Shown one piece after another: positions 1 through 20,719 of a stretch of DNA of 64,000 bases (positions within the stretch are counted from its first letter, which is position 1; the number at the start of each line of letters is the position of its first letter). Made by a program: the position numbers and the translations under genes. Origin of the DNA: Octopus bimaculoides. Lineage: Eukaryota. A model generated the notes under the pieces. That model worked only from the letters and a program-made list of their open reading frames with translations, did not search any database and was not told the origin of the DNA. Location of the stretch: assembly GCF_001194135.2 (NCBI RefSeq), contig NC_068993.1:6543958-6607957 (forward strand), read 5' to 3'.

Positions 1-41
1 TATATATATATATATATATATGTGTGTTTGTATAATTACAG

Positions 42-2617: not shown

Positions 2618-2658
<41 letters not shown>

Positions 2659-4714
2659 CTAGCACCATCACCATAAGGGATATTAGACTGTCATTTCTAT
2701 CAGGTCAAGCAGATAAGGAGATTACAGGTAGGATCTCTCACTAGGTTGCTTTTTTTTTTTCTCATCTAAAATACACTTCCATTATATTCTTAACCATTTT
2801 TTTATAATTAGAAAGGTGGTATTGAATTGATGTGGGATTGGATAGAAAAATATGCTGTTCCAGGAATCTTCCCACTCACAGACAGTAATGGTAAAGAACT
2901 GAAACTGTACGACCAATATTTCCTGCCAGACAAAACCAACAGGCGTCTTGGAGGCATTCGTCTGAGACAGATAAGAATGGTAAAAGGTAAATATAATTTA
3001 CAAACAGTGATTATTCCATTTTGTTTCTTACCATTTTGCCCAAGAACCTGTTTCGATTATGCCTTGTAGCATTCAACTACATCTCTTTACATTCTGAGTT
3101 CAAATCCTTCCAAGGCTGGCTTTGTTCTTTATCCTCTTGGTTTCATCATCGTTTAACATCATGTTCCATACTGGCATGGAGTGAATAGTTTTGAGGGAAT
3201 CCTGTGGAACCAAGGAGTGCAACATGCTCCAATGTCTGCCTTAATATGTCTTCTATGAGTGGATACCCTTCTTAATGTCAACCAATTCGCAGAATGGACT
3301 GGGTGTTGTTTTTTTGTGCCACAAGAACTAGTGAGATTACTATGTAGCTTGCAAGGCTATGAACCACAAGAAAGACAACTTTATGCTAGGAGATAAGGAA
3401 CTATGCAGTTGAGGTGGGCCGGAAGTATAGGGTCAGTGATGTCACACGAACGGCCGAGGGGCCTTGCTGGAAGAGAAATGAGGCAGGTCATGTAAGCAGA
3501 AGCATGACTAACATGGGCCTCTTTTGCGTTGGGACTTTTGCTCGGGATGAATGTGGTGGCTGCATGAGTTGAGTGAGTTGGTAATAAGGTTCTGGTCAGA
3601 GTAGGGTTCCAATGGATATATCCCAGTTGGAAAGGATCAACATTACAAAAGAACCTGCTAGGTGAATTATGCCTTCTTCCCCCATACCATAAGCTATTTT
3701 GGCCCTCGTGCATTTTTCTCTCTCCCACCCCTTTCTGAATGATATGTCAACAAAAATAAGGAGTGGTATCAACGCCGTCATTACTTAATTACTTTGTGTG
3801 TTTCCAGTTCCATGTCACATGTCAAGAATAATCAAAATGTGCATTCCAAACTATTCTGCAGAACATGAAGATACAAAGGATTATCTACCAGGTAAACATC
3901 CATCATAATTATTGTCATCACTGTCATCTTCATCATCATCATCATCATCATCCCCATCAACATCATTTTTGTTTTACCGGTCACTTTTACATGCTCACAT
4001 GAGTTGGATGGAATTTGCAGAAGGAGATTTACTATACTTGGGTGCCCTTTCTGTCACCGACCCTCATATGTTTCCAAGCAAGTTAACTTTTCCTCGTGAC
4101 CACACATATTTTCATAGAAGTTTACAAATAAAGGACATCGGTTGTTTACAACTATCATGCAATAATAAGACAACAACAACAACAACAACACACACACACA
4201 CACATAGATACAAAGACATATACACATCCACATATGCTAGAGTTTTTTCAGTTTCTCTCTACCAAATCCACTTGCAAGGCTTTGGTTGGCCCAGGGCTAT
4301 AATACAAGAGACTTGACCAATGCATCATGCAATGAAACTGAACCTGAAATCATGTGGCTGGTAAGCAAACTTCTTAACCACAAGTGCCTTGCCCGCACCT
4401 ATATATACAGTGACCCGCAAAAGTTTACAACGCACAATCAAAAATCCAAATTTACATATATTGAGTCAATGCAGGTTAATGAAATTTCCACTGTTTATGA
4501 AATTGTTCGTAATAAATTCAATGCAACAATCAGAATTACATAATAATGAGCAGAAACTAAACTCAAGGCACTGCAGGAAGACCTGGAAGCATATAAAGTC
4601 CATGTGAGCAAGGATACAATATATGTTAACTTGAGCTTTTCCCTGTGTGTTTTAAACTTTTGCGAGTCACTGTAGTTATAGAAGTACAAGCTTAGCTGGA
4701 TATATGTGTATGTG

Positions 4715-4747
<33 letters not shown>

Positions 4748-6222
4748 GTATGTATGTAGTGTGTATGTATGTATGAATGTTGTGTTATGCAATGTGGTCT
4801 TAAAAAAATGTATAAACTGTCCAGAATTTGAAACCACATATACATGGTCATGAGTGGAAGCCTGTTACCACTAGACCATGACCCTTTTACATGTGCATTT
4901 CAGGAAATAATAAAATGATTTAATCATTGTTATAATTACTCTTCCTTAATGCAGGCTGGAAAATTGGTGCCAAGCAGAAAGAAGAGGATAAATATATAAC
5001 TGCTGCATTCAAATATACTTCTGAAGAAAAAGCTGGATATAGCTTCATTCATTATGGAATACAAGGAAGTTATAAAAGTGCTGGTTATATCATTGATATA
5101 AACGAGAGACACAAGAAAGCAAAATCATTGTTCGAGAAACTTCGTTTGAACACCTGGATAGACGAGCGTACCCGAGTGGTAACCATTGACATTAGCACAT
5201 ACAATGCTAATTCTGGGCTTTTCACATCAACTAAAATTGTGATTGAGAGATTGTCCTGTGGTAGAATGGAGCCATCTATTCTTTCACTCAGCTTCAAGTT
5301 CCATCCATTTGTTGATCCTCTGGATTACTTGGTGCTGCTGATAATTATCATCGTTGGAATTCTGTGTTTGATAACTTTGGCAGGAGTTGTCATAGCCATT
5401 AAGAAACGACGCATGCAAGCCCTGCGTGAATATCACACCCTCATCAATATGGCAACTGTAATCTCCATCCTAGTCATCCAGATTGGCTTCGGTTTGAGAA
5501 TTGACGCTCTTCTTCAAATTCAGGATAAATTGGTCAAGAATCCAGGTAAACAGTTTTAATTTTAATATATATGTTTTTAGTGCAATGTGGTGACAGAATC
5601 ATTAGCACACCAGGCAAAATGCTTAGTGGCATTTCGTCTGATTTCACATTTTGATTTCAAATTCCGCCAAGGTCAACTTTGCTTGTCGTCCTTTCAGGGT
5701 TGATCAAATAAGTACCGGTTGAACACTGGAGTTGATGTGAACGACTTTTCCCTCACCTGAAATTGCAGGCCTTGTGTGAAAATATGAAATTAAGGCATTC
5801 CTTTTTGTGAAAGAGCGTAGGCTTGAAACATCAAAAATTCTTCCATTTTTCCAGAGCGTCAAATTAATATATCTTGTTTGTTGCTCCCTTACCTGGCTCT
5901 GTTTTTTTTTGTATTTTGTTTTTGTACATTTTGAACCTTATGCATACACACACACACACACACACACACATACACACACAAACACACACACACACAAATA
6001 TCAGGTCATCCTATAAGTAATGTCCTAAATATCATATATGTAATTTCCATTGAATTTTACAATTTTCTAAAATGCCAAATGAGATTGATTTTTTCGTACA
6101 TAGACTTGCCTAACTTGCTTCTCCTTACAATCTACTCCTCTACCTGCTCAAATTCAAATCTCTTAAGTACTATGAAGTGTATTCTGCATGGAGAATACCT
6201 GTCTCTAATCTATCTGTCTATC

Positions 6223-6293
<71 letters not shown>

Positions 6294-6311
6294 AAATGTA
6301 AATATATATAA

Positions 6312-6348
<37 letters not shown>

Positions 6349-7571
6349 NNNNNNNNNNNNNNNNNNNNNNNNNNNNNNNNNNNNNNNNNNNNNNNNNNNN
6401 ATATATACATACATATATGTATGTATATATATATATATATATGTATATATATGTATATATATATATGCACATATATGTATATATATTACACTCTCTGAGT
6501 GGTTGGCGTTAGGAAGGGCATCCAGCTGTAGAAACTCTGCCAAATTTAGATTGGAGCCTGGTGTTGCCATCCGGTTTCACCAGTCCTCAGTCAAATCGTC
6601 CAACCCATGCTAGCATGGAAAGCGGACGTTAAACGATGATGATGATGATGATGATGATTCTGTATAGTTATTACATGATTTTATTATTTCAGATGCCTAT
6701 GTATCAGGGAACTTAATGGCATCCAGAGTGATGGTGTATTTTGCTGGTCTCTGTGCCTGTGTGGTAGTATTCGCCATCAAGCTATTACAACCACTTGCCT
6801 TGAATTACCACCTGTTCTTGATGAAGGCCAGTATCATGCTATCGCTGCCATCCATCGCATCATTCAGCGTCGTCCTTTTCTTCCTTATGACAGCTTTTGC
6901 AATCGGCATTCATATAACTTTCAATAACGTATCGATATATTTCATCGATTTGAAATCCACCTACCTGGCTCTCTTCCGCATTTTCCTTGCCATGGGCAAA
7001 TTCAAAGAGACTTTCGGTTTAGATAACATCATGTCGAACATGGTTTTCTTCATCTACACCTTGCTCGTGTCTATCATTCTGTTAAATGTATGCATTAGTA
7101 TTATCAACGATACGTTTAGCTTTGTCAAAAGCAGGATTAATTCTCTTGGATTTGAATACTGTTTTGATTTCAAACTCAACGAACATTTCTGGTATAGAAT
7201 GACCACTCTCTTTTACAAGAAGAAAATATCCAGTGAAGGTTATTATTATTATTATTATTTTCTTTTCTTTTTTGTTTATTCTTTTATTCTTTTATTTGTT
7301 TCAGTCATTTGACTGCGGCCATGCTCACAGTATAGGCGACTTGTCAGACTCAAATGGCTGAAGGCACATAGCCTCTCTACAACCGGAAGAAGAAATACAA
7401 ATCCAACTCGCCATTATGTATGTCTTCCTCTAGTTGTAGAGAGGTCATATGTCTTCAAACATTTGAGTCTGATGAGGCTGACGCTTTATATGTGCAAAAT
7501 CAATGGTCACTCTCTGATTGGCCACAGCATTTTAACTTCCTACAATGTATGTGTGTATATATATATGTGCA

Positions 7572-7637
<66 letters not shown>

Positions 7638-8744
7638 TGTGTGTGTGTGTGTATATATATATGTTCCTTTTTCTTCCTGGGAAAACGAAGCATCAGAATG
7701 CATGACCTGATGTCAATCCTGCTTCTCAGTTCAAGTATTTGAGCCAAGTTGATTCCAACATCTGGACCAACTTCGTGCAAGCATGAAGGCATGCTGACAA
7801 AACGCTGCTCCTCTAAATGGAAACCTTCCTGCTGTCATGGTATTGTAGCACAAAGCAAAGCAGGCCTTGCCTTCCACTCTAGAAAATATATAATGAATGA
7901 TGCCCAAGCAGTCAAGCAAACGGATTCCTTAACTCGTTCCTTTTGCCAAAAGGTTTGCAAAGTACTGGAAGGCCTCAAGAGATGGTCACATATTTTGTGG
8001 ACACATTCGTATCCATAGAACATGATAAACGCTTTATTTTACTGAATCCTCATTTGTTGTTCATGACAAGAGAATCCATCAAATATATTGGTGTTAGTAT
8101 ATGTGTATACGTTTCCATTATAATGTAATAATATTATTCTAGACATACATTTTTCTAAAACTTCATTTTCCTTTTTGTCTGCTTCAAGAGAAATATTTAC
8201 CAGTGAGAATGAATTCTCAGATAACAAAGAAAGTATTTCAAAAAGTAAGTTAACTTTTTCCCTGATTTTAATCCGATGTTTTATATTTTCTTTTCACAAA
8301 CTGGAATTAATTCTTACCAAAGTGTTTCATCTGGACTCTTACAATAGTAGAATTAATTCTTTATATTTAAACTGGCCATATCCAGTCCAAATATTCTACA
8401 TGTTTTATGTTGAAACTGGCCAGATCCAACCAGTCACACATAACCTACAATATTTACATTATTTACATTTGATGGATATTTGTCCTCATCTTGTTCATTG
8501 TTAACACAACATTTCAGCAGATATCCCTTCCAGCCTTCATCAGGTGTCTTGGGGAAATTTCGAACCTTCACTGGATGATACCTCAACTTCAATTCTCACC
8601 ATCCATACAGTGTAAAGAGAGGGATTGCTCAGTGCCTAAAACGTTGAGCAAAGAATATAAGTAGCGATTGTGATACACACCATGAAGAAATGATCAACTC
8701 AATAACAATCTGTTAAGCAACAACTACCCAAAATAATAATAATG

Positions 8745-8801
<57 letters not shown>

Positions 8802-11800
8802 TTGAAAAATACCTTAGGAAATGAGAACCTAGGTTCGAAATTTCCCCAAGACACCTGATGAAGGCTGGAAGGTATATCAGCCGAAACGTTGTGTTAACAA
8901 CAAAGAAGATGAGGACAAATATCTGTCAAATGTAANNNNNNNNNNNNNNNNNNNNNNNNNNNNNNNNNNNNNNNNNNNNNNNNNNNNNNNNNNNNNNNNN
9001 NNNNNNNNNNNNNNNNNNNNNNNNNNNNNNNNNNNNNNNNNNNNNNNNNNNNNNNNNNNNNNNNNNNNNNNNNNNNNNNNNNNNNNNNNNNNNNNNNNNN
9101 NNNNNNNNNNNNNNNNNNNNNNNNNNNNNNNNNNNNNNNNNNNNNNNNNNNNNNNNNNNNNNNNNNNNNNNNNNNNNNNNNNNNNNNNNNNNNNNNNNNN
9201 NNNNNNNNNNNNNNNNNNNNNNNNNNNNNNNNNNNNNNNNNNNNNNNNNNNNNNNNNNNNNNNNNNNNNNNNNCAAAGGTCTCGGTCAGTAGTCATCGCC
9301 TCGGTGAGGCCCAATGTACGAAGGTCTTGCCTCACCACCTCAGCCCAGGTCTTCCTGGGCCTACCTCTTCCACGGGTTCCCTCAACTGTTAGGGTGTGGC
9401 ACTTTTTCACACAGCTATCCTCATCCATTCTCACCACATGTCCATACCAGCGCAATCGTCTCTCTTGCACACCACAACTGATGCTTCTAATGTTCAGCTT
9501 TTCTCTCAAGATACTTACAGTCTGACGGGTATTCACATTGACATTACACATCCAACGGAGCATACTGGCTTCATTCCTTGCGAGCTTACGTATGTCCTCA
9601 AATTCCTCATCTCTTAAATATAGAACTATAACCTACAATGTCTGTCATTCTAAAAATAAACAATCACAGCTTCAAAATTTTGAAAGGATAAGATACTTCA
9701 TAAAGCATTACAATTGATAAATTAATCTGAATGCTAAAGAGTTAAGCCCTCACCAAAATATTTTATTTACCATCTTGGAGTAGAATAAATTCGCAGCAGA
9801 ATATTTTGATTGAAGTACAAATATTGTTGTCCTGTATTATATCATCACCACCACCCTGTGTTACATCATTGCCATCACCATCATCATCATCATCATCATC
9901 ACCACCATCACCACCATTACCACCACTACCAAGACCACCACCACCACCACCACCACCACCACCACCAATTCGTTATTTCTGGGAGTTTAGTGTTTAGTTT
10001 TCCTTCACTCACAAGATATCGGTGATGCCAATGCTACCTAATGTTCTCCTAATTTGACTAATGTTACTTCCTTTTTTCACAAACTTTCAGTTCGATCTTC
10101 TCGTTTGTGAGTCCATCAGTGACTTTGAAGAAATAAGTTGGATGCTGCTGAAGAAATACATAAATTGTTATCTGGATATGCATCTCAGGAAACCTGACTT
10201 TGAAAGCGTCCAGACCAAATTACACGGTGCCAGTGATGCTATGAAGCTTTTCCAGCCAGTTTTCACAGACCTGTGCCAGATAGGAAACCAATTGGAAGTT
10301 AAAAAGATCTGCAATGGAGGAACATCATGGACACTTTGGTAATAACAGGAACATTTAATACGATATAGATATTAAAAATTTGCTTAATTTTATTTTTGAC
10401 ATAGACATCATAAAAATGTATAAACTTCAAGAGAATGTTAAATAATTTAGTTTTGGAACAGTGGGTCTTGAAGCATTTACAGCTATAAATAATAGCATGT
10501 AAATATTAAGTTAAAAAGACACTTGCTTAGAAAAAGTTGAAGGCTGCCCATGGGATATGAACCTACATCTCCTGTAAATATGATAGGTGTTCTACCATTG
10601 AACCAAAGCAATTTTTGCCAATTTAAAAACTGAAGTTTTAACTCCAGGTCAGGCTTGACTAAGCAGACTTTGACAAGAAGAGTTCAGCTGTGACCACCCC
10701 ATCAGTGTTTTGTATATCTAAGCATCATAGGCATATAGAAGCAGTGAAGAAGCAAATATGGTAAACCGGTGCATGAAATACCTTATTATATTTACTATAT
10801 TTAATGGCATAAAAGAGTGGCATATTAGGTGCAACTTCCTTTTCAGCAATGTGTATTCTGGGAAAAACAGTTTGTAATGTATTAAAGTATGCATTGTTAC
10901 ATGTTCTGATCCACGGTTCACTTCCTGTGCTCTGCAATGCTTCATCAACCAAAAAGGGACAGAAGCTTCAGTGAAGGAGTTCTTCACCTCGAAGAACAAG
11001 AACTGGTATCAGCGTGGGAACAAAGAACTGGTAGAAAATCGGTTTCACATGGTGCAAAACGATGGCCTCTCTGTTGAATGCAAGGCAGCGTTTTTTGTAA
11101 CTTGATAAATAAGGTAAATAAGTTACCAAAATATTGATTTCAAATTTTAGCATAAAGCCAGCATTTTGTGGGGCGGGAATAAGTCAATTACATCGACCCC
11201 AGTGTTTAACTGGTACTCATTTCATCGACTCCGAAAAGAGGAAAGGCAAAGTTGACCTCGGTGGAATTTGAACTCAGAAAGTAAGGATGGATGAAATGCC
11301 ACGAAACATTTTGCCTGGTGTGCAAAACAATTCTGCCAACTTGCCGCCTTAACATGGCAAAACATTTGACTCAACACAATGATAAAGGCCCAACTTTGCA
11401 TATAGGATCCAAGATGATATTTTAAAAACCGTTTTGGGGCAGAAATTGCATTTTATATGCCTTCAAATATGGGAGTTTAATTTTTCATTTTTCTATGTTC
11501 AATTTCCATACCAGTAACAGTTCTGCTTTTTGTCTCTCTGGGGCTGATACAATGACTAACAACTATGTCAGTGAAGGAAGGAATTTGTTCCAATTAGTAG
11601 TCTTGAAACGGTATACAGAAAGTTTTATTTTTACATCCATAAATTATATATAATTTTTTCATTATTATCTGTCCTATATAATTCCTACTGTTACTAATTA
11701 AAAATTTTCTTTTAATTCTTTTTAAAATTCCAAAACAACAAACAAACGAAAAATGAACATAACTAATTAAACAATACATAAAATAAACAAACAAACATAT

Positions 11801-13822
11801 ACAAAAAAAAAAAAAACAGGTATTATTGGAAATATAAGGACCCAGTTCTGAAAGTATGCTGTAAATGCCACAATGAAGTTCCTGAAATATTATGTTATGA
11901 TGTGACTGATAAAAAATATCAGATGTTACCACAAATGCAACAATCCCAGTTTGTGGGTCCTGTCGTCTGGATTTGTCAACCAACAACCTGTAATGTAGAC
12001 CAGGTAAGGATCACTAAGTTAGTCTTACTCTGCAGGAGTCATCAGTTAAGCTTGTACAAAAAGGGGTTATTAATTTGGTCCAGTGATATTTTCTTGGTCA
12101 GAGACCAGTGATTAAAACACAAGTATGATTATATAGGGGTGGTCATAGCCGCGTGGTTAAGAAATTTGCTTCGTAACCATGTGGTTTTGAGTTCTCGCCC
12201 AATGTATGTATATGTATGTTCTCTCCCAATGTATGTATATGTAGTCTTTTATGCTTGTATATTTTACAGTCAACCTTAGAGATTACATCATTCTGTCATG
12301 AAACCCTTCACCAATATCACTGCTGTGAACTCATTGAAAGCAGTGATGGAATTAATTGGTCAAATTATGATGATGATGATGATATGATTGACTGCAATGA
12401 AGTGATGTCTCCTCATTTAGAAGAGGTATGAGAAACAGTTAACGATCTTTGTTTAGTAGATATTATGTGTATATATATACATGCTTGTGTATGTATATGC
12501 ATATGTATCTCTGTGTGTGCATATAGATATATGTTTATATATATATATTATATATATTTATATTATATATATATATATAATATATGCATTTTATATATAT
12601 ATATTTATATATATGTATATGTAATATATATAACTGTTATCTATCCCATTCAAATATTTAATAATAGCGTTTAATAATCTAATAATTTAGCTTTTACTCA
12701 ACCTTTGCTTGTTGCCACTCATTCCACAACACACACACACAATTCCTTCCCAGCCAGTAACTGAAAAAGCCTTCTGCCCAACCTACACCTCGCATACATC
12801 TCATACAAACTTCTTACATATCTATGCTGTAACCACAAATCTCTTGTTTTTCTGTTCCACATTGCATCACCTCTGATACTTCTGACACCTGTGCCGCCAC
12901 CACCACCACCATGGTTTTTATGGTGAACATCAACATCCTCAACAACAACACCAACAATAGCATAGTTACGAAGATGAGAAGTTGATAAGACAGCTACCCT
13001 GTTATATTGCTCTCACCAAGCGGATGAGAGCAGAAACCTGGCTGTTTCATGGCACAAAGCTGGTCTCGTCTTTGGAACCAAACCTCTCCATTATGATCCC
13101 ACTAGAAGCAAGTCTCTCTCAGAAGATCGTCCTAAGACTTAAAGTAAGATATATCTTCATCTCTTAGACTTGGATATGTATGTATGTGTGTATGCATGTA
13201 TATTTGAAAGCATGAATTTTGTGTGTGTGTGTGTGTGTGTTTGTGTGTGTGTGAGTACGTGTGCATGAAAGCTTGAAAGTGTGACTGAAAGCTTGGGGAG
13301 GGGAAGTGGCAGGACTAGTAGCAAAATATTTTCATGTAATACAATACAGGTTTTTCTAAGGATGTTGGCAGTACTTGTCAGCACAATCTTTTGGATTCCT
13401 CTGAGCCATGGTTCTCCTGGGATATAATCTACGTTTCTGATATCCCTTTCTTATCATACCTATTATTATTATTATCATCATCATCATCATCATTATTGTC
13501 ATTGTCATCGTTGTTTTTGTTGTTGTTGTTATTATTATTAGTCGCATAAAATTAATACTGTGACCATGTTTTCTTCTAGTTAAACCCTTACCAACCGATA
13601 CCTCAGTTGTTCCTCACCTTCAACATAGATTTACAGCAACCAATCACCGTCCATTTTTCCACTACAAGCAATACTACATTTCCAGGTAAGTGAACCAACA
13701 CAAAGAAACCCATCTCTTCAACCAATGCCACAGAAGTATTGTTCTCATTACTACTGCTGCTCTCATCTTGTTGTTACTGTTGCTGTTATTCTTACCAACA
13801 TCAACTTGTCTTGTTGGTTTGT

Positions 13823-13857
<35 letters not shown>

Positions 13858-15646
13858 TGGTGGTTGTCTACTCCTTAAACAGAGTTTGACCACCTCCTGC
13901 ATCTACACCTTAGCCCTTTCATGGCGTCTGATGTGGCTTTTTAAACCAGACAGTGTTTTGAAAAAACACCCACACAGATTGCACCTCTGATTTGCACTAC
14001 CAATACCTGCAAGTAAGTTCTGCTCATTGTGGATCCTAACATGTCTTTTAAGACCCCCATTGGATTTGCAAACCCTCTGGCACACACCACATTCAAACGT
14101 GTGCACAGACATATAATCAGAATAGCTGGGTGAGGTTTGTTTTCCATGGGTTCGCAGGTGAGATTTGAGGCCAGCCAAGGACAGACATGGTATATATACA
14201 TCTGTGTGTGCACGTGCATGGAATTTTGACTGGCAACTGTTGGCTCTCGTTGGAGCTCATCAATACAATGAAACTCAAGACCAACTATTTGGTCTATGTT
14301 TAGTAAAAACATTTAGGAACTAAACACGATCGGGTTTCTTTCCTTCTCTTATTTTTTCTTTCTTCCTTTCTCCCTTAACAGTGGAGAAGAGGTGTGATGA
14401 TGATGATTGTATATATATATTTCTTCTTTCTTTTCCTGTGCCTTAAATGCATGTGTGCGGTTTGTGTGGTAGTGATAGTGGTGGTGGTGCATGTGTGAGT
14501 GAAAACAAAACCCACTTAGAGCTGAGACAAGTTGTCAAGTGTCTTAATAAAGGGCTGGTACCAGTAAAAAGCTTTATCTGCATGGAATCTTGCACCCCAC
14601 ATCTGTATAAAATCTTGATACTATAAACTAAACTTTCTGTTTCTAGATTTGCAGCTGTATTCCAAGAACCGTTCCTCACAATGGACTGAGGAAGCCATTC
14701 AGATATCCCAAAACCAAGGAATTAGCTTTAAGATAAAGCCACCCTCAAAGTAAGATCTTGTTTGTCTTTTATTATTATTTTTATTATTACTGTGTTTATT
14801 GTTAAGGCAAACTGGCAGAATAATTACTGCACCGGAGAAAATATTTTGCACCATTTCATCCGGCTCTTTATGTCCAAAATTCAAATTCCACTTGATGTTG
14901 ATTTTGCCCTTCATTCTTTCAGAGCTGGTGAAATAAGTACCAGTTCAGTTTTGGGGCTATATGTAATCGACTTACCTCTACCCTCAAAATTTGTTGGCCT
15001 TAGGCCAAAAATAAGGAATTATCACTGTGAGTGTTAATCCTAAAAGAGTGGATTTATGTAATTAGAAATCAAAAATAAAAGCTGGGACAAATGTACTTCC
15101 ACCATGCAGCTTGCCCAAGGGCGTTTATACATCCATATTTGTTAACGGTTATTTTTAATACTTTTCTCGCTGGATTGCATGTTCGCTTCTGTTTTTTCCC
15201 ATCTGTGATTTTATTTTTGATCTTCTATATATATGAAGATATTTCCTCCGTCTGGTTGCTTTTCTTTCTAGAAAACAAGATGTTACATTGTGGAACTCTT
15301 ATTCTAATAAGTTGTGTCTCTTTATCAACCAATGAGATACATCCTGAAGCGGCTGTTGAGTGTCTTACTCATGAGGGATCGATGTGGCGAAACAATTGTC
15401 ATGATTAATAATGAATTCTTGTATATTCCATCTTCTGTCTTTCATTTGTCATATATATATATGTGTGTGTGTGTGTGGTGCATGTATGTATAATATTTAT
15501 GAATACGATACTTATATCTGATGCATGCATGCTTTCAATTATCATTTTATTTTATTTCAATCCAGATGTGAAACTGTATATATGTTGAAGCCATCACACA
15601 TACTGTGGGTGAGTATGCATATATTTACACACACACACAGATACTG

Positions 15647-15677
<31 letters not shown>

Positions 15678-18600
15678 TACACACGTACTGAGAGAAACAA
15701 TATTTCTTGTTATCATTATTATCATTATTATTATAATAATCATTATTATCATTGTTGTTGTTGTTAAGGCAGCGAGCTTGCATAATCGTTAGCATGATGA
15801 GCAAAATGATTCAAGGCATTTCATCTGTACTTTTTCTCTGAGTTTAAATTCCACCAAGGTTGACTTTGCCTTTCATCTTTTTGGGATAAGTAACAGTTAC
15901 GCACTGGGGTCGATGTAATCGATTAGCCCCTCCCCCCAAATTTCAGGCCTTATGCCTATAGTAGAAAGGATTATTATCATTATCATCATCATCATCATCA
16001 TTATTATTATTATTATTATTAAGGTGGCGAGCTGGCAGAATCATTAGCATGCTGGACAAAATGCTTAGTAGTATTTCACTCATCGCTATGTTCTGAGTTC
16101 AAATTCCACCAAGAACGACTTTGCCTTCTATCCTTTCGGGGGTTGATAAATTAAGTACCAGTGAAACACTGGGGCTGATGTAACTGTCTAGTCTCCTCCC
16201 TGCAAATTTCAAGCCTCGTGCCTTTAGTAGAAAAGAATATTATTATTATTATTATTTCATTTCTAGGACTGGCAGAAACAGCTGCAATGTATCAAAGGTA
16301 AGATGGCATTGATTCTAAGAATATAATCTATTTTTAGAATTTATCAGATACTCAAGACTCCAGACATTAATCTCCCACCATCCCCCTCTCTAGTGTATGA
16401 GTGTATGTGTGATAAAGAGATTGTGTGTGAATGTGTGTGTGTGTTAGGGCAAAGATCTGATAACTAGTGACCTACAACTAGTAACCAGGTGGACTAGAAC
16501 AATCTTTTCATGGCTGCGAATTTGGTGAGCAAACCCTAAAACCCTACAAAGTCTGCTTGATGAGAGGGTGGTTTCAGGGGTCAGTCTGCAGGATGAGAAA
16601 CAAAACCCGATTGGTCAGCCAATAATATGTGTGTGCGTGAATGTGTGTATAAAAGCATGTGGCTTAGGGATTAGATTATTCGGCTCATGATTGTAAGGTT
16701 ATGAGTTCGATTCCTGGAGACACATTGTGTCCTTGAGCAAGACACTTTATTTCACATTGCTTTACTCCACTCAACTGGCAAAAATGAGTAGTCCTCTGCC
16801 CTGTGTTTCAAAGGGCCAGCCGTGTCACATTTTGTATCACAATGACTCTCCCTGAGAACTGTATCGAGGGTATACGTGTCTATGGAGTGCTCAGCCACGT
16901 TCTCATTCACGAACAGTCTGTTTTGTTGATTGGATCAACTGGAACACTTGTCGTAAGCGACAGAGTGCCAGTCAGATATACATATATTTATTTCCTGCCA
17001 TCTCTGAAGAGTATCATGTGTGTTAGTTAACTGCCCTGTAACCTAACATCTAGTGTGAAACCAATTGGCAAGTTTGGCTGAAATGGATCTATAATACAGT
17101 ATATTTTGATTTATATATACATACATACATACATATATAAATATATATATATATATATCCACACACATGTAGATATATGTATGTGTTTTTGTGAGTGAAC
17201 AAGCATGTGTGCATGTACATTTTTGTGTGTATGAAGATGTACATGGGAGAAGAATACCTGAATATATAAGCATGAATTTGTACCATTTTCTACTTTCCAA
17301 GATCCTGTTAACAAAGATTTCCTTCTGCAAGTATCAACTGCCATTGGAAACAAATGGCAACTTCTGGCACAAGAACTGAACGTCTCTGGGCTGGTTATGA
17401 AACGGATAAAGACAACTGCCAGTGATAAAGCTCCTCATGTGGCCTGTTTCAACATGTTAATTGCATGGCATAACTCTCTACCTGTTACAAGCGATAAGGT
17501 CAGTTATTATAGCTATTATTGTTTAACCATGGGCTAGCTTCCTTTGAGTAGATCTTTCATCAAAAGCATTCCACCACAGACATATACATGCATAAACACG
17601 CATACACACACTCACACATGTATAACTTAAACCTTTAGCACACATAAGTGCATAATGGTGCCATACGAACTTCCCTCTATAATTGCAGGTGCACTGGGTC
17701 GCATTGAAAGGGGACATAACTTATACGGTAACAATGCAGCTACAGTATGCTAAAGGTCAAAGCCATTTTTAACTCTTTTGGTACCAATATGTCTGAGATG
17801 GTCTCTGGTTCTTATATAAAATCTCTCATTTTTAAATAAGTTTTCAGATCCACTTTTTTTTAAAGTTGGCATGGATTGAATGAGGAATTCTTGTAGTGGT
17901 ATGCTATGGTAAAATATATTCATGGACATAAATATCAACTGCTTAGGAAATTCATTGGCAGGAGCTCCAGGGCACCCCAATCATATCAACAAGCTTGTCA
18001 ACTGTTCAGTGACGGTCCTCCAAGATCAGTTCATGCATTTTTGTGAGGTTTTCATTCGTTCGGGATGTCGACGGTCGCCCTGAATGAGGTTGGTCTTCAA
18101 GCGACAAGTGACCATTCCTAAAGTATGAAAACCACTTGTGAACTTATGTTTTGCTCATGGCAGCATTGTTGTAAGCTGTTTGAAGCACGACAGCTGTTTT
18201 CTCCAGCAGAAAACAGAACTTTACAGAAGCAGGCTGTTCCTTTGTTTCAGCCGTCGCAAAAATCAATGAACAAAGGAGAAGCACCACTAAACAAAGATGC
18301 ACCACATGGCAGTAGGACTACATCCAATGCTGCCAGAGGGCAGACTGATGCCTGAGGGTCACATCAACTGGCTTCTAAAGGCAGAAGCCTGAACTACAAC
18401 AGTTTTATCCCACAGAGAATGTTTCCAATTACTTTTGTGTAACCCCTTGTACACTGAAACTGTTTAAAAAAAAAAATTCCAACATTTCAGGTAAAACCCC
18501 TCACTTCAGCTCTCTCAGTCCTTGGCTACAAACAACTTGCTGAACAATTAAACACAACAGCAGAAGAGTACAGTCACAAGTGTCAAACAGCTCTTTCTGG

Positions 18601-20719
18601 TAAACATTCAGGAAAATTTTTCTAATATTTATAATTAATTAGATTTTGTTAATAACTAGCAGCTATCTATGCAGGGCCTTGCTTTGTTTCTCTCACACTT
18701 TAACCCTTCATTCCATTGCATAAAATCGCCACCTTCTTTAATGTAACCCCATTCAGGGATCTAAGTTTTGCAAGCTTCACAGCAACTTCACTGGTGCTGG
18801 TGCCATGAAAAATGCTCAGTACTTGTAAAGTGGTTGGTGCTAAGAAGGGCAGGCACCCAGCTGTAGAACCCATGCCAAAGCAGACTTTAAACCAATCAGA
18901 ACCTGTCAGAAAATTCAACCCATGGCAACTGGAAACATAGGCATCAAATAATTATGATGATGGAATAAATATCAATCATGTGCTTAAGCTTAGAGATTAG
19001 CTATCACTTGTGCGAGAAAGTGGCATGGTATCACGTACCAGTCTTGCTAAAACACTGGTGTTTATGTACATTATTTACATTTGGTGGATATTTGTCCTCA
19101 TCTGGTTTGTTGTTAACACAACATTTCGGCTGACATACCCTCCAGCCTTCATCAGGTGTCTTGGGGAAATTTCGAACCTGGGTTCTCATTCCTAAGGTAT
19201 TTTTCTTCTCACCTGAATAATAATATCGAAAAATACCTTAGAAATGAGAACTTTCCCCAAGACACCTGATGAAGGCTGGAGGGTATATCAGCCGAAACGT
19301 GTTAACAACAAACAAGATGAGGACAAATAGCCATCAAATGAACATAATTCCTCATCTCTAAATATAGAACCAGTGTTTATGTTGTCAGAAGCACACAGAT
19401 ACCATTTTGTTGTCTCTCCTATTCTTTGGCCCAATAGAACATCGTGGAAATGACAGATGGAGAGCAATGGGCATGCAACTTTTTACAAAAGTATGGTATC
19501 TATCAATCATAGGTGCCATATTTTCCTACAAAATTTGTCCTTTTAAAAATGCAATAACCCCCTTATTGAAATCTCAGAACTACAAAATAATGTCTAAATT
19601 ATTTAAAACAATGTAAATAAATAAGCTTTACATTTGATAGAAAACTTTGAATGCTAAAGGGTTAACAAAATTTTGTTCGAGAAGGAAATCAATATTTTAA
19701 TTGAATGCATAAATTCCATGGTTTTTTTGCAGATTGTGAGAAAAAGAAATTCTTTGATTTCCTTTGCCGTTCTAAAGCTCTGGCAATCAGATGGCAGGAA
19801 CTGGCCACATATCTGGGTATTTCAGAAGAAACACAGGAAAACATTGACAAACGGGTTGATCTATCTCTTCGAGAAAAGTGCTTTTCTGTCTTGGAATGTT
19901 GGCAAAAATATGATCAAGAACTACTCCAGAAATCTCTCACAAAACTCAGTCACCAGTTCCTTGCTTGTAAGTATTCAAAATCTCGAGTTCCAATGCATTT
20001 TCATAGGGTTTATGCTTTCAGTTGCTGTCATTTGCTACAAACACGTATATCTGTGAGTTCCCTCTGTGTTTACATTTGGAATAAAAATGGTAAGAACTTT
20101 CAGGTCTCCCTTGAGAATGAATTTGTTACAGAAACTATGCGGAAGCCCATCACACATACAGAGAGACATCTATCTATTATTTGATATTACCATCATTCAT
20201 ATTGAATGTTTTCTATATTTTAACTAATATAGGCGCAGGAGTGGCTGTGTGGTAAGTAGCTTGCTTACCAACCACATGGTTCCAGTTTCAGTCCCACTGC
20301 GTGGCACCTTGGGCAAGTGTCTTCTACTATAGCCTTGGGCCGACCAAAGCCTTGTGAGTGAATTTCGTAGACGGAAACTGAAAGAAGCCCGTCATATATA
20401 TATATATATGTATGTGTGTTTGCGTGTCTGTGTTTGTCCCCCCACCATTGCTTGACAACCGATGGTGGTGTGTTTACATCCCCGTAACGTTCGGCAAAAG
20501 AGACCGATAGCATAAGTACTAGGCTTCCANNNNNNNNNNAAAAAAAAAAAAAAAAAAAAAAAAAAGAGTATATCTAATTTTCATCATTTGATCATTAATA
20601 ACTTTTATATTTCTAAACTGATTTCAGGTAGAGTTCCTGCTTTCAAACAGAAAACTGAAGCAACACCACGACCACAACCACCACCACGACCAACAAAAGT
20701 CACCTTTGATATTCCATAA
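42..20719 (+). CDS. Polycystin-1-like (PKD1L/REJ family) channel with C-terminal ZU5-ZU5-death-death tail; 5' part lies outside the window
   Basis: Exons 42-690, 1665-1779, 2338-2576, 2812-2986, 3808-3891, 4955-5545, 6693-7238, 8189-8244, 10091-10338, 11820-12003, 12270-12425, 12961-13143, 13580-13685, 14647-14749, 15566-15608, 16267-16297, 17302-17498, 18491-18599, 19733-19966, 20628-20719. All are GT-AG with compatible phases, no internal stop, TAA at 20717-20719. PKD motifs: YYFECNNWLAFDKGDG (PLAT end), FTRVQRLS, FVQPLKV, LRQIR, WIDERTRVVTIDISTYNAN, LLNVCISIINDTF. Confidence 0.9.
1665..1779 (+). CDS. PKD1L exon (end of TM5, loop)
   Basis: ctag|VVFTAMLLSFIFKSPSTEEDKYETDLCSDRFNDLSQFP|gtaaat; phase 0 to 1. 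Confidence 0.85.
2338..2576 (+). CDS. PKD1L exon (S1 helix)
   Basis: ttttcag|VPKESLK...FRCLYIVLLLILIAN...KKFSQ|gtaaat. Confidence 0.9.
2812..2986 (+). CDS. PKD1L exon (TOP/polycystin domain)
   Basis: ttag|KGGIELMWDWIEKYAVPGIF...RRLGGIRLRQIRMVK|gtaaat. Confidence 0.92.
3808..3891 (+). CDS. PKD1L exon (TOP domain)
   Basis: ccag|PCHMSRIIKMCIPNYSAEHEDTKDYLP|gtaaac; phase 1 to 1. Confidence 0.88.
4955..5545 (+). CDS. PKD1L exon (TOP domain, S2, S3)
   Basis: gcag|GWKIG...AFKYTSEEKAG...LRLNTWIDERTRVVTIDISTYNANSGLF...KNP|gtaaac. Confidence 0.95.
6487..6658 (+). mobile_element. RTE LINE 3' UTR fragment ending in (GAT)n, young family
   Basis: Near-identical copies at about 30835-31010(-), 43845-44008(+), 57388-57545(+). 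Confidence 0.8.
6693..7238 (+). CDS. PKD1L exon (S4, S5, pore, S6)
   Basis: tttcag|DAYVSGNLMASRVMVYF...STYLALFRIFLAMGKF...LLNVCISIINDTFSFVK...KKKISSE|gttatt. Confidence 0.93.
7331..7490. mobile_element. Foldback MITE-like hairpin with TATA ends
   Basis: tcagactcaaatggctgaaggcacatagcctctctacaac pairs with gttgtagagaggtcatatgtcttcaaacatttgagtctga. Confidence 0.6.
7700..8020 (+). mobile_element. Degenerate LINE 3' end with eroded C2H2 motifs
   Basis: QSKAGLAFHSRK and FCQKVCKVLEGLKR resemble the zinc-finger tail at 13903-14178. Confidence 0.4.
8189..8244 (+). CDS. PKD1L cytoplasmic-tail exon
   Basis: ttcaag|EKYLPVRMNSQITKKVFQK|gtaagt; this acceptor gives the phase 1 to 0 bridge into 10091 (an AG at 8189-8190 would give another frame). 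Confidence 0.65.
8452..9627. mobile_element. Penelope-like inverted-arm retroelement with 12-bp target-site duplication
   Basis: Inverted arms containing ctgatgaagg...ccgaaacg; TSD ataacctacaat at 8440-8451 and 9628-9639. Confidence 0.6.
9274..9597 (-). mobile_element. RTE-clade LINE, reverse-transcriptase C-terminal fragment
   Basis: RRLRWYGHVVRMDEDSCVKKC...GRGRPRKTWAEVVRQDL; runs into an N gap. Confidence 0.9.
10091..10338 (+). CDS. PKD1L tail exon (helical linker, start of ZU5-A)
   Basis: ctttcag|FDLLVCESISDFEE...VKKICNGGTSWTL(W)|gtaata; phase 0 to 2. Confidence 0.75.
10542..10612 (-). pseudogene. Degenerate tRNA-like sequence (tRNA pseudogene or SINE head)
   Basis: D stem gttc/gaac around TGG, T-loop ggttcatatccc, about 71 nt, several stem mismatches. 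Confidence 0.4.
10962..11150 (+). mobile_element. Mariner transposase C-terminal remnant
   Basis: EASVKEFFTSKNKNWYQRGNKELVENRFHMVQNDG resembles the mariner C-terminus (FF.SK...WY.RGI..L..RW......DG.YF). Confidence 0.75.
11820..12003 (+). CDS. PKD1L tail exon (ZU5-A)
   Basis: aaaacag|YYWKYKDPVLKV...LPQMQQSQFVGPVVWICQPTTCNVDQ|gtaagg; phase 2 to 0. Confidence 0.75.
12270..12425 (+). CDS. PKD1L tail exon (ZU5-A C-half)
   Basis: tttacag|STLEITSFCH...ELIESSDGINWSNY...PHLEE|gtatga. Confidence 0.78.
12961..13143 (+). CDS. PKD1L tail exon (ZU5-A/ZU5-B junction)
   Basis: aatag|HSYEDEKLIRQLPCYIALTKRMRAETWLFHGTKLVSSLEPNLSIMIPLEASLSQKIVLRLK|gtaaga; exact acceptor uncertain. Confidence 0.75.
13580..13685 (+). 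CDS. PKD1L tail exon (ZU5-B)
   Basis: ttctag|LNPYQPIPQLFLTFNIDLQQPITVHFSTTSNTTFP|gtaagt. Confidence 0.8.
13856..14300 (-). mobile_element. 5'-truncated LINE 3' end with three tandem C2H2 zinc fingers
   Basis: SLAGLKSHLRTH (first finger frameshifted), CGVCQRVCKSNGGLKRHVRIH, CNLCGCFFKTLSGLKSHIRRH; short 3' UTR ending in accaccacc and a (TA)n tract. Confidence 0.65.
14647..14749 (+). CDS. PKD1L tail exon (ZU5-B)
   Basis: ttctag|DLQLYSKNRSSQWTEEAIQISQNQGISFKIKPPS|gtaaga; phase 1 to 2. Confidence 0.8.
15566..15608 (+). CDS. PKD1L tail micro-exon
   Basis: tccag|(K)CETVYMLKPSHILW|gtgagt; open only with phase-2 entry, which is the phase supplied by the previous exon. Confidence 0.75.
16021..16237 (+). 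mobile_element. SINE family B
   Basis: gagctggcagaa...ctgagttcaaattcc...ccttc.atcctttcgggg...aagtaccag. Other copies at about 5590-5790(+), 11155-11352(-), 15765-15970(+), 32298-32510(-), 38378-38584(-), 43262-43480(-), 53645-53850(+). Confidence 0.85.
16267..16297 (+). CDS. PKD1L tail micro-exon
   Basis: ttctag|DWQKQLQCIK|gtaaga; phase 0 to 1. Confidence 0.72.
16650..16975 (+). mobile_element. tRNA-derived SINE family C
   Basis: gagttcgattcc...ccttgagcaagacactttatttcac. Other copies at about 25282-25615(+), 35838-36115(+), 36290-36545(-), 53190-53505(-), 63685-63915(+). Confidence 0.8.
17302..17498 (+). CDS. PKD1L tail exon: death domain 1, helices 1-4
   Basis: ttccaag|DPVNKDFLLQVSTAIGNKWQLLAQELNVSGLVMKRIKTTASDKAPHVACFNMLIAWHNSLPVTSDK|gtcagt; not in the ORF track. 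Confidence 0.88.
17943..18410 (-). mobile_element. Mariner transposase N-terminal (HTH) pseudogene fragment
   Basis: KEQPASVKFCFLLEKTAVVLQTAY...HKWFSYFRNGHLSLEDQPHSGRPSTS...LILEDR, with in-frame stops. Confidence 0.85.
18491..18599 (+). CDS. PKD1L tail exon: death domain 1, helices 5-6 and linker
   Basis: tttcag|VKPLTSALSVLGYKQLAEQLNTTAEEYSHKCQTALS|gtaaac. Confidence 0.86.
19068..19370. mobile_element. Penelope-like inverted-arm element, second copy
   Basis: About 130-bp inverted arms around a short spacer; flanking direct repeat gtgtttatgt at 19058-19067 and 19373-19382. Confidence 0.6.
19733..19966 (+). CDS. PKD1L tail exon: death domain 2
   Basis: ttgcag|DCEKKKFFDFLCRSKALAIRWQELATYLGISEETQENIDKRVDLSLREKCFSVLECWQKYDQELLQKSLTKLSHQFLA|gtaagt. 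Confidence 0.88.
20231..20528 (+). mobile_element. tRNA-derived SINE family A
   Basis: A-box tggctgtgtggtaag, B-box-like gttcagtccc. Other copies at about 49926-50290(+), 59464-59835(+), 40905-41062(+), 37015-37392(-), 40120-40468(-), 44990-45252(-), 63057-63175(+). Confidence 0.85.
20628..20719 (+). CDS. PKD1L terminal exon (Pro-rich tail, stop)
   Basis: tttcag|(C)RVPAFKQKTEATPRPQPPPRPTKVTFDIP* followed by a second TAA. Confidence 0.8.

What the first reader, a model, noticed from the sequence alone, without database searches (positions are those of the whole stretch)
10300..16297. Tandem ZU5 domains without a UPA domain and without the PIDD autoproteolysis motif
By-eye alignment to ankyrin ZU5A/B recalled from memory: QFVGPVVWICQP ~ L.SPVV; ELIESSDGINW ~ ELVVLRSENGETW; QLPCYIALTKRMRAE...GTKLVSSLEPNLSIMIP ~ DFPQYFAVVSRIKQE...GGILSSTTVPLVQASFP; QQPITV...PDLQL...QWTE...ISF ~ HKPITM...PNLRL...QWED...VSF. 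Only about 25 aa separate ZU5-B from DD1, so the UPA domain of the canonical ZU5-ZU5-UPA-DD supramodule seems absent. The PIDD1 HFS|W self-cleavage sites read QLPCY and PPSKC here. Inference: an uncleaved, ankyrin-like module with a new topology.
Basis: partly seen in the sequence, partly recalled or inferred. Interest (0 to 1): 0.7.

Follow-up and report, generated by a model that had tools for sequence, protein, structure and literature searches.

The report
Ankyrin-like ZU5 pair on octopus polycystin
The cytoplasmic tail of an octopus polycystin-1-like membrane protein carries two very divergent ankyrin-type ZU5 domains joined almost directly to two death domains, with no UPA domain and no self-cleavage motif: an unusual domain arrangement, so far seen only in cephalopods and of unknown function.

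Summary
Four independent RNA assemblies join the + strand exons 10091-10338, 11820-12003, 12270-12425, 12961-13143, 13580-13685, 14647-14749, 15566-15608, 16267-16297 and 17302-17498 without a gap. The only sequence between the second β domain and death domain 1 is two micro-exons (43 and 31 nt), so no UPA exon exists in this mRNA. Orthologues in Argonauta and a cuttlefish lack UPA too.

Pfam, PDB sequence search and two AlphaFold runs (pLDDT 45 and 39) did not recognise ZU5. A profile-profile comparison did. A three-species cephalopod profile aligns with an ankyrin ZU5A-ZU5B-UPA profile in one unbroken run across the domain junction (hhalign P 1.1e-5, score 47; best of 150 column shuffles 22.7). 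Domain 1 is solid (P 6e-5). Domain 2 alone is weak (P 0.03; 1 of 200 shuffles).

The PIDD/NLRP1 cleavage position reads QLP, like ankyrin DFP, with an invariant proline where the nucleophile should be.

The module is the tail of a PLAT/polycystin-domain/PKD-channel protein (LOV-1-like) and is followed by two death domains. Verdict: a real new variant of a known module. The fold is unconfirmed and the function is inferred.

The parts
6700..7238 (+). Context: last transmembrane (PKD channel) exon of the same gene. It is read here from 6700; its 5' end lies near 6689. The donor site is at 7239.
   Evidence: Pfam PKD_channel E 5.5e-11 and Polycystin_dom E 5.6e-23 on upstream exons. The same RNA contigs as the tail cover 6700-7200, and 94 nt of mRNA separate 7200 from 10091. 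Donor candidates were listed.
8189..8244 (+). 56-nt mini-exon (E)KYLPVRMNSQITKKVFQK, linking the channel exon to the tail. Inferred.
   Evidence: 38 + 56 nt equals the 94 nt required by the contig positions. The peptide was found and matches O. vulgaris P0003 and Argonauta P0001.
10091..10338 (+). Tail exon 1: a predicted helical segment (aa 1-66), then the start of ZU5A-like domain 1 (LEVKKICNGG.. from 10292).
   Evidence: RNA contig piece and GT..AG joint 10337/8 to 11819/20; translation; helices in both AF2 models, at low confidence.
11820..12003 (+). Exon 2: core of domain 1, including QFVGPVVW, which pairs with ankyrin QFLSPVIV.
12270..12425 (+). Exon 3: domain 1, with EITSFCHE pairing with EIPHFASH and ELIESSDGINW pairing with ELVVLRSENGSVW, plus an acidic loop.
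12961..13143 (+). Exon 4: last strand of domain 1 (RQLPCYIALTKRMRAE, to 13035; QLP lies at the HFS-equivalent site), then the start of ZU5B-like domain 2 (GTKLVSSLEPNLSIMIP, from 13036).
   Evidence: RNA piece 12959-13147, where the last 4 nt are aligner overhang with 1 mismatch. hhalign pairs it with FPLYFVIMSRLCQD..GGSLKSKLVPLVQATFP.
13580..13685 (+). Exon 5: domain 2, with PQLFLTFNIDLQQPITVHFS pairing with [22 protein letters not shown]. It holds a literal HFS at 13652-13660, which is not at the cleavage position.
   Evidence: Loose-end sequences and record arithmetic.
14647..14749 (+). Exon 6: domain 2 (DLQLYSKNRSSQWTEE..GISFKIKPPSK).
   Evidence: record 4411-4513 in the 5435-nt contig; extended hhalign alignment at low confidence.
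15566..15608 (+). Exon 7, a 43-nt micro-exon: last strand of domain 2 (CETVYMLKP) and the start of the linker.
   Evidence: record 4514-4556, directly after exon 6.
16267..16297 (+). Exon 8, a 31-nt micro-exon: linker (..DWQKQLQCIK).
   Evidence: Loose ends; record positions 4557-4587.
17302..17498 (+). Exon 9: N-terminal two thirds of death domain 1.
   Evidence: record 4588-4784; Pfam Death 25.9 bits, above the 22.6 cut-off; AF2 pLDDT 74-91 and Foldseek matches to death domains, including ankyrin-G and ankyrin-1 DD.
18491..18599 (+). Exon 10: end of death domain 1 and the linker. The start is shown by RNA; the donor at 18600 is inferred.
   Evidence: Loose end; splice logic; O. vulgaris XP_036364125.1 (P0004).
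19733..19966 (+). Exon 11: death domain 2. Inferred.
   Evidence: Pfam Death with two stretches, 43.4 bits in all; P0004 Death E 5e-6.
20628..20719 (+). Exon 12: proline-rich C-terminus and the stop codon. Inferred.
   Evidence: matches P0004. The RNA contigs are long enough to hold it (544-888 nt beyond 17498).

Best explanation
Window 34-20719 (+ strand) is the 3' part of a cephalopod polycystin-1-like gene. Its Argonauta orthologue is annotated 'location of vulva defective 1-like'. The finding covers the protein's cytoplasmic tail.

**Layout after the last channel helix:**
- a helical stretch of about 125 aa;
- a domain of about 155 aa homologous to ankyrin ZU5A;
- directly abutting it, a compact domain of about 115 aa homologous to ankyrin ZU5B;
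- a 15-25 aa linker;
- two death domains and a proline-rich end.

The UPA domain, which sits between ZU5 and DD in ankyrins, UNC5, PIDD and NLRP1/CARD8, is absent from the mRNA and from the orthologues.

**No self-cleavage (inferred from sequence).** The position that carries the HFS/SFS self-cleavage tripeptide reads QLP, with an invariant Pro at the nucleophile position, as in ankyrin DFP. At the end of domain 2 it reads PPS/PTS/QAN. The tail is therefore most likely not self-cleaved.

**Likely role (inferred).** The ZU5 pair is a rigid, non-catalytic scaffold. It either presents or holds back the two death domains, as ZU5 does for the DD in UNC5B. That would couple a polycystin receptor-channel to assembly of a death-domain signalling complex.

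**Shown:** the gene model, transcription, death domains, polycystin domains, absence of UPA and HFS, and profile-level homology to the ankyrin ZU5A-ZU5B pair.

**Inferred:** the fold, the lack of cleavage and the function.
For: - **Gene model.** RNA contigs of four runs give consecutive record positions across all exons from 10091 to 17498, and the same contigs cover channel exon 6700-7200.
- **Protein context.** Pfam finds Polycystin_dom and PKD_channel upstream and PLAT, Polycystin_dom, PKD_channel and Death in the Argonauta orthologue. tblastn shows the window to be collinear with P0001 aa 786-2087.
- **Death domains.** Pfam Death scores 25.9 bits for DD1, and 43.4 bits for DD1 and DD2 together. 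The AF2 DD is confident and Foldseek finds ankyrin-G, ankyrin-1, TNFR1 and RIPK1 DDs.
- **ZU5 homology, whole tail.** hhalign of the three-species alignment A2 against an ankyrin ZU5A-ZU5B-UPA profile gives Prob 82%, P 1.1e-5, score 47 and 166 columns across the domain junction. That profile was built on ANK1 911-1365, verified, plus 132 fragments. The 150 column shuffles have mean 14.1, SD 2.3 and maximum 22.7, and the reversed query scores 18.1. Control windows from the rest of the gene score 18.9 or less, apart from a true hit on the cuttlefish tail.
- **ZU5 homology, per domain.** D1 against ZU5A gives P 6.4e-5. D2 against ZU5B gives P 1.1e-3, and D2 against ZU5A gives P 0.03, in register. 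Nothing aligns with UPA.
- **UPA absent elsewhere.** No UPA-like ORF lies in the window. The orthologues have the same short linker.
- **Cleavage site.** Its position is taken from PMC3210808.
Against: - Pfam ZU5 (PF00791) is not matched by any of the three cephalopod sequences, even at E of 10 or less.
- PDB sequence and profile searches find nothing for the β region.
- Both AlphaFold2 runs gave pLDDT below 50 for the β region, because the family has only 3-5 sequences. The fold is therefore unverified, and Foldseek on that part is meaningless.
- Domain 2 without the junction residues reaches only P 0.027, and 1 of 200 shuffles reaches its score.
- Domains 1 and 2 show no similarity to each other. 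Ankyrin ZU5A and ZU5B are also only 14% identical.
- Logan contigs drop rare isoforms, so a minor UPA-containing isoform cannot be formally excluded.
- The ankyrin DAR spectrin-binding motif is not conserved (ICN/INN/VKN, from the alignment).
Confidence: 0.7

Rival explanations
1. Only domain 1 is a ZU5. The second β-rich block (aa 222-336) is a different domain: a shrunken and unrecognisable UPA, or a lineage-specific β domain. In that case the module would be a degenerate canonical ZU5-UPA-DD rather than ZU5-ZU5-DD.
For: - Domain 2 alone scores only P 0.027 against ZU5B.
- It is about 115 aa long, against about 165 for ankyrin ZU5B.
- The UPA reference profiles available were thin: 5 sequences and 1 sequence.
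- ZU5-UPA-DD is the common arrangement in UNC5, UNC5CL and NLRP1/CARD8 (PMC3210808).
Against: - Domain 2 aligns in register from its first residues with both ZU5B (4-65 to 4-78) and ZU5A (8-97 to 7-112).
- Both UPA profiles give nothing: P 0.18-0.72, with 1-5 aligned columns.
- The alignment runs without a break through the ZU5A/ZU5B junction with ankyrin-like spacing, LPCYIALTKRMRAE..GTKLVSSLEPNLSIMIP against FPLYFVIMSRLCQD..GGSLKSKLVPLVQATFP.
- Pfam UPA and UPA_2 give no hit.
Confidence: 0.17
2. Neither block is a ZU5. The resemblance is chance similarity between β-rich sequences, and the region is a cephalopod-specific domain of unknown fold.
For: There are no Pfam or PDB sequence hits. The AF2 models have low confidence. 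The query profile rests on only three sequences.
Against: - The hhalign score of 47 compares with a maximum of 22.7 in 150 shuffles, 18.1 for the reversed query and 18.9 or less for other parts of the same protein.
- Domain 1 matches ZU5A but not ZU5B, UNC5 ZU5 or UPA.
- The cuttlefish sequence alone hits the same junction at P 0.008.
- A death domain follows, as in every ZU5-DD family.
Confidence: 0.08
3. A UPA domain exists but was missed. It would lie in a rare alternative isoform or in unassembled sequence.
For: Logan contigs keep only dominant forms. Raw reads were laid only on 10000-12510. The window contains N gaps.
Against: - No N run lies between 10091 and 18599.
- Four assemblies from three studies agree.
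- The Argonauta gene model and the cuttlefish transcript lack UPA as well.
- No UPA-like ORF lies in any frame of the window.
Confidence: 0.04

Closest known systems
Ankyrin ZU5A-ZU5B-UPA-DD supramodule (ankyrin-R/B/G; PDB 3UD1, 4D8O, 3F59)
   Same: - Two consecutive, mutually dissimilar ZU5 domains in the same order, with the same junction spacing.
- Domain 1 matches ZU5A and domain 2 matches ZU5B.
- The tripeptide at the cleavage-equivalent site has Pro at the third position (QLP against DFP), so it is non-cleaving.
- A death domain lies C-terminal, and its fold is closest to the p84, ankyrin-G and ankyrin-1 DDs.
   Different: - There is no UPA.
- The linker to the DD is about 20 aa.
- There are two death domains instead of one.
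- Domain 2 is about 50 aa shorter than ZU5B.
- There are no ANK repeats: the module is the tail of an 11-TM-type polycystin.
- The DAR spectrin-binding motif is not conserved.
- The sequence is too divergent for Pfam ZU5.
PIDD1 (LRR-ZU5-ZU5-UPA-DD), self-cleaving at HFS after each ZU5
   Same: Tandem ZU5 followed by a death domain, in a protein that could nucleate a DD complex.
   Different: There is no HFS/SFS at either ZU5 end, no UPA and no LRR.
UNC5 netrin receptors and UNC5CL (ZU5-UPA-DD; PDB 3G5B)
   Same: A membrane receptor with a cytoplasmic ZU5...DD tail. The UNC5B cleavage-equivalent tripeptide is QLG, close to QLP here. In UNC5B the ZU5 holds the DD in a closed, inhibited state, which is the model for the function proposed here.
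   Different: UNC5 has a single ZU5 plus UPA. The UNC5 ZU5 profile gives no signal with either octopus domain (P 0.2-0.3).
MACC1 / SH3BP4 (ZU5, SH3 and two death domains). From my own knowledge, not tested here.
   Same: ZU5 combined with two tandem C-terminal death domains.
   Different: They have a single ZU5, an SH3 domain between it and the DDs, and are cytosolic adaptors. No sequence comparison was done.
Polycystin-1 family (PKD1, PKD1L1-3, PKDREJ, C. elegans LOV-1)
   Same: PLAT, the polycystin (TOP) domain and the PKD channel domain in the usual order.
   Different: Known members end in a short tail or a coiled-coil tail. I found no report of a ZU5 or death-domain tail: literature searches found none.

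Membership tests
ZU5 domain (Pfam PF00791 / ZU5 superfamily) | Match to the curated Pfam ZU5 model above the gathering score | tested here: not met
   No ZU5 hit at E of 10 or less for the window protein, the Argonauta orthologue or the cuttlefish orthologue.
ZU5 domain (Pfam PF00791 / ZU5 superfamily) | Significant profile-profile homology to bona fide ZU5 domains | tested here: met
   hhalign: tandem P 1.1e-5, D1 against ZU5A P 6.4e-5, D2 against ZU5B P 1.1e-3 (0.027 without the junction). Shuffle, reverse and same-gene controls all score far lower.
ZU5 domain (Pfam PF00791 / ZU5 superfamily) | β-sandwich ZU5 fold | tested here: inconclusive
   AF2 with 5-6-sequence alignments gave pLDDT 45 and 39. 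The region is predicted β-rich but without confidence, and Foldseek was informative only for the DD.
Ankyrin-type ZU5-ZU5-UPA-DD supramodule | ZU5A then ZU5B, adjacent and in one unbroken run | tested here: met
   One alignment spans ANK1 33-240 across the junction. The domains match specifically: D1 with ZU5A, D2 with ZU5B.
Ankyrin-type ZU5-ZU5-UPA-DD supramodule | UPA domain between ZU5B and DD | tested here: not met
   Only about 20 aa lie between the domains in the mRNA and in the orthologues. There is no Pfam UPA or UPA_2 hit, no hhalign signal and no UPA-like ORF.
Ankyrin-type ZU5-ZU5-UPA-DD supramodule | C-terminal death domain | tested here: met
   Pfam Death is above its cut-off. There are two DDs.
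Ankyrin-type ZU5-ZU5-UPA-DD supramodule | N-terminal ANK repeats and the DAR spectrin-binding motif in ZU5A (the motif is from my own knowledge of ankyrin-B mutants) | tested here: not met
   The N-terminal partner is a polycystin. The position before the GG motif reads ICN/INN/VKN instead of DAR (alignment), but that N-terminal stretch is aligned with low confidence.
Self-cleaving ZU5 (PIDD, UNC5CL, NLRP1/CARD8 FIIND) | [HS]-F-[ST] tripeptide at the C-terminal end of ZU5, just before the long last strand | tested here: not met
   The site position comes from PMC3210808. Domain 1 has QLP/GLP/TLP with an invariant Pro. Domain 2 has PPS/PTS/QAN. The literal HFS at 13652-13660 lies mid-domain, at the ankyrin 'IPLPP'/'IPHFA' position, and reads RFQ in cuttlefish.
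Polycystin-1-like (PKD1/LOV-1) family | PLAT, polycystin domain and PKD channel domain | tested here: met
   Window exons: Polycystin_dom 81.9 bits and PKD_channel 42.8 bits. The orthologue P0001 also has PLAT at 58.8 bits. The window starts inside the end of PLAT.
Death domain (PF00531) | Six-helix death fold and the Pfam model | tested here: met
   Pfam Death 25.9 bits for DD1 and 43.4 bits for both. AF2 pLDDT is 74-91 with six helices. Foldseek TM 0.6-0.75 to solved DDs.

The most novel reading that the evidence does not exclude
Cephalopods have fused the spectrin/death-domain end of an ankyrin-like adaptor directly onto a polycystin receptor-channel. The channel would then carry its own cytoskeletal or signalling anchor and start death-domain signalling (cell death or NF-kB-type) when the polycystin is activated. 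The module would be a minimal ZU5-ZU5-DD-DD unit that folds and regulates its DDs without UPA, and so a new supramodule topology.
Probability: 0.15. Interest if true: 0.7.

Novelty: new variant of a known kind. Interest (0 to 1): 0.45.

Why it matters
In every structurally studied ZU5-DD protein (ankyrins, UNC5, PIDD, NLRP1/CARD8) the UPA domain is part of the folding unit. It mediates either auto-inhibition or the post-cleavage association of fragments. A natural ZU5A-ZU5B pair joined straight to death domains would test whether UPA is dispensable for folding and for control of the DD.

The host protein makes it more interesting. No polycystin-1 family member is known to carry ZU5 or death domains, so this tail suggests a direct link between polycystin sensing and death-domain signalling in cephalopods.

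The family is tiny: octopods and cuttlefish only, among 1.84 billion representative proteins. Invertebrate death-domain proteins shuffle domains freely. The result is therefore a curiosity of domain architecture until function is shown.

Tried and rejected
- **Read laying on long stretches.** I then laid short repeat-free pieces and used contig record positions to prove that exons are adjacent.
- **First protein search.** A crude exon concatenate found nothing. The exhaustive representative search found the orthologues, and a profile search added one cuttlefish transcript.
- **Pfam.** Searches on the crude concatenate, the true protein and all three orthologues gave no ZU5 or UPA. The only hits were sub-threshold noise (Reelin_subrepeat-B, BNR).
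- **PDB sequence search.** phmmer and hmmsearch gave only a weak DD hit.
- **AlphaFold2.** Two runs, on the whole tail and on the tail without the DD, both gave low confidence in the β region. I did not seed the MSA with ankyrin sequences, because that would make the fold test circular.
- **hhalign against a single ANK1 sequence.** The alignment was in register but not significant (P 0.085). It became significant only with a family profile.
- **The literal HFS in domain 2 (ITVHFSTT).** I considered and rejected this as a retained PIDD-type cleavage site. The real site is at the C-terminal end of ZU5 (PMC3210808). This HFS aligns mid-domain and is not conserved in cuttlefish.
- **Cys after QLP and after PPSK.** I considered and rejected this as a nucleophile. 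The equivalent of the Ser is the Pro, and the Cys is not conserved (C/C/A and C/V/Q).
- **Internal duplication (D1 against D2).** No signal.
- **UNC5-type origin.** No signal.
- **Rest of the window (21-64 kb).** No paralogue, only repeats and gaps.

Full report
**1. What the window is**

The sequence is AT-rich, full of microsatellites and N gaps, and clearly eukaryotic. DNA and RNA runs of one organism hold it. The closest named proteins are from Octopus vulgaris (90-96% identical fragments), Argonauta hians and the cuttlefish Acanthosepion pharaonis. The window therefore comes from an Octopus species.

**2. Gene model**

The same RNA contigs (4413, 5435, 5049/6394 and 4084 nt, from four runs) cover every piece, with consecutive record positions. 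This gives these + strand exons, all GT..AG:

| Exon | Coordinates | Note |
|---|---|---|
| 1 | 10091-10338 | |
| 2 | 11820-12003 | |
| 3 | 12270-12425 | |
| 4 | 12961-13143 | |
| 5 | 13580-13685 | |
| 6 | 14647-14749 | |
| 7 | 15566-15608 | 43 nt |
| 8 | 16267-16297 | 31 nt |
| 9 | 17302-17498 | |
| 10 | starts at 18491 | |

- Exon 6 ends at contig position 4513, exon 7 is 4514-4556, exon 8 is 4557-4587 and exon 9 starts at 4588. Nothing else lies between the second β domain and the death-domain exon.
- The remaining exons follow from splice logic and from O. vulgaris XP_036364125.1: 18491-18599, 19733-19966, and 20628-20719 with the stop codon.
- The tail from exon 1 is 561 aa long.

**3. 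What gene it is**

- The same contigs cover 6700-7200, which encodes the PKD channel. Only 94 nt of mRNA separate 7200 from 10091. These are the end of that exon (to 7238) plus a 56-nt mini-exon at 8189-8244.
- Upstream exons match Pfam Polycystin_dom (81.9 bits) and PKD_channel (42.8 bits).
- The window from 34 to about 18600 is collinear with aa 786-2087 of a 2118-aa Argonauta protein named 'location of vulva defective 1-like'. That protein has PLAT, Polycystin_dom, PKD_channel and Death.
- The finding is thus the cytoplasmic tail of a polycystin-1-like protein.

**4. Death domains**

- Pfam Death matches aa 361-438 above its cut-off. With the full tail there are two stretches, 43.4 bits in all.
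- AlphaFold2 models DD1 confidently (pLDDT 74-91).
- Foldseek finds solved death domains, with ankyrin-G and ankyrin-1 DD among the best.

**5. Is the β region ZU5?**

Direct tools say nothing:
- There is no Pfam ZU5 or UPA hit for the octopus, Argonauta or cuttlefish sequences.
- There is no PDB sequence hit.
- Two AlphaFold2 runs gave pLDDT below 50 there, because only 3-5 relatives exist. An exhaustive HMMER scan of 1.84 billion representative proteins found relatives of this region only in cephalopods.

I therefore ran an HHpred-like test.
- I verified that the ankyrin sequence I recalled is human ankyrin-1 911-1365, and that my UNC5B sequence is PDB 3G5B.
- I fetched 120 ZU5-containing proteins and built profiles locally.

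Results for the three-species cephalopod alignment (A2) against the ankyrin ZU5A-ZU5B-UPA profile:

| Test | Result |
|---|---|
| A2 against the full ankyrin profile | Prob 82%, P 1.1e-5, score 47; query 34-217 aligned to ANK1 33-240 |
| 150 column shuffles | mean 14.1, SD 2.3, max 22.7 |
| Reversed query | 18.1 |
| Other parts of the same gene | 18.9 or less, except the cuttlefish tail itself, which hits the same junction at P 0.008 |

  | Octopus tail | Ankyrin-1 |
  |---|---|
  | QFVGPVVW | QFLSPVIV |
  | ELIESSDGINW | ELVVLRSENGSVW |
  | LPCYIALTKRMRAE..GTKLVSSLEPNLSIMIP | FPLYFVIMSRLCQD..GGSLKSKLVPLVQATFP |
  | QQPITVHFS | HRPIGLRIP |

- In the low-confidence extension it also pairs DLQLY with SLRLL, QWTE with QWED and ISF with ANF.

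Domain by domain:

| Comparison | P |
|---|---|
| Domain 1 against ZU5A | 6.4e-5 |
| Domain 1 against ZU5B | 0.4 |
| Domain 1 against UNC5 ZU5 | 0.2 |
| Domain 1 against UPA | 0.05 |
| Domain 2 against ZU5B, with junction residues | 1.1e-3 |
| Domain 2 against ZU5B, without them | 0.027 (1 of 200 shuffles reaches it) |
| Domain 2 against ZU5A | 0.03, in register |
| Domain 2 against UPA | nothing |

Domain 1 is therefore well supported as a ZU5A homologue. Domain 2 is supported mainly by its continuity with domain 1, the junction and consistent register.

**6. UPA**

- The transcript evidence is given in section 2.
- Argonauta and cuttlefish have the same short linker: ETxYMLKPS.I..W....I.C.KDP, then the DD.
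- No N gap lies in 10091-18599.
- Neither tblastn nor a UPA HMM finds any UPA-like ORF in the window.
- UPA is absent from the dominant mRNA. A rare isoform cannot be excluded with contigs alone.

**7. Cleavage motif**

- D'Osualdo et al. place the HFS/SFS site at the C-terminal end of ZU5, just before the long last strand. Its Phe is equivalent to UNC5B Leu-677, the L of QLG (PMC3210808).
- In ankyrin-1 that tripeptide is DFP. Here it is QLP (GLP in Argonauta, TLP in cuttlefish), and the Pro is invariant. No nucleophile is present.
- At the end of domain 2 the sequences read PPS/PTS/QAN, with no conserved hydrophobic residue or nucleophile.
- A literal HFS does occur in domain 2 (13652-13660) and is conserved in Argonauta. 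It aligns to the mid-domain 'IPLPP/IPHFA' position and reads RFQ in cuttlefish. I regard it as coincidental.

**8. How it probably works (inference)**

- The module is uncleaved, ankyrin-derived or ankyrin-like, and has lost or never had UPA. It carries two DDs.
- By analogy with UNC5B and ankyrin, the ZU5 pair is most likely a rigid scaffold that binds a partner and/or masks the DDs until the polycystin is activated. The DDs would then recruit DD adaptors.
- Spectrin binding is not supported, because the ankyrin DAR motif (from my own knowledge) is not conserved.

**9. Novelty**

- The family is restricted to cephalopods at HMMER sensitivity.
- Literature searches for polycystin with death domain or ZU5 found nothing relevant.
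- This is a new variant of the known ZU5-DD kind of module, on an unexpected host protein. The fold of the β region and any function remain to be shown.

Noticed in passing
window 11180-11345 (intron between exons 10091-10338 and 11820-12003): A very high-copy interspersed repeat. RNA contig word depth here is 10^4-10^5, against about 16-25 for the gene. Many polymorphic positions and hundreds of loose ends show that it is a dispersed, SINE-like element expressed from many loci.
   Followed up: no
window 8877-9563, minus strand: ORF fragment typical of the C-terminal end of a non-LTR retrotransposon ORF2 (..RLRWYGHVVRMDE..GRGRPRKTW..). It is interrupted by the N gap at 8936-9273 and lies in the intron before tail exon 1.
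   Followed up: no
window 17462: All four RNA assemblies read G where the window has T. This changes Ile405 to Met in death domain 1 (FNMLIAWH to FNMLMAWH). O. vulgaris also has Met, so the window carries a polymorphism or an assembly error.
   Followed up: partly
window 13652-13660: A literal His-Phe-Ser in ZU5B-like domain 2 (ITVHFSTT), conserved in Argonauta but RFQ in cuttlefish. It is not at the PIDD/NLRP1 cleavage position, so it is probably coincidental. A cleavage assay would settle it.
   Followed up: partly
P0017 / P0005 (cuttlefish relatives): The cuttlefish orthologue keeps both ZU5-like domains, but no death domain is recognisable after the conserved CLKDP linker (Pfam finds nothing). 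The ZU5 pair may therefore be the conserved core of the tail and the DDs an octopod feature, or the DDs may have been lost in cuttlefish.
   Followed up: partly
window 1-7238 and P0001: The host gene is a PLAT/polycystin-domain/PKD-channel protein. Its N-terminal Thr/Pro-rich, mucin-like repeats are seen in the Argonauta and O. vulgaris proteins. The public O. vulgaris gene models split this locus into at least three fragments (P0002, P0003, P0004).
   Followed up: partly
window 45600-46540: A tandem repeat of about 25-27 aa units (..VRPNTRKELDHF.. on one strand) flanks the N gap at 45887-46204. The rest of 21-64 kb shows only microsatellites, gaps and no long ORF.
   Followed up: no
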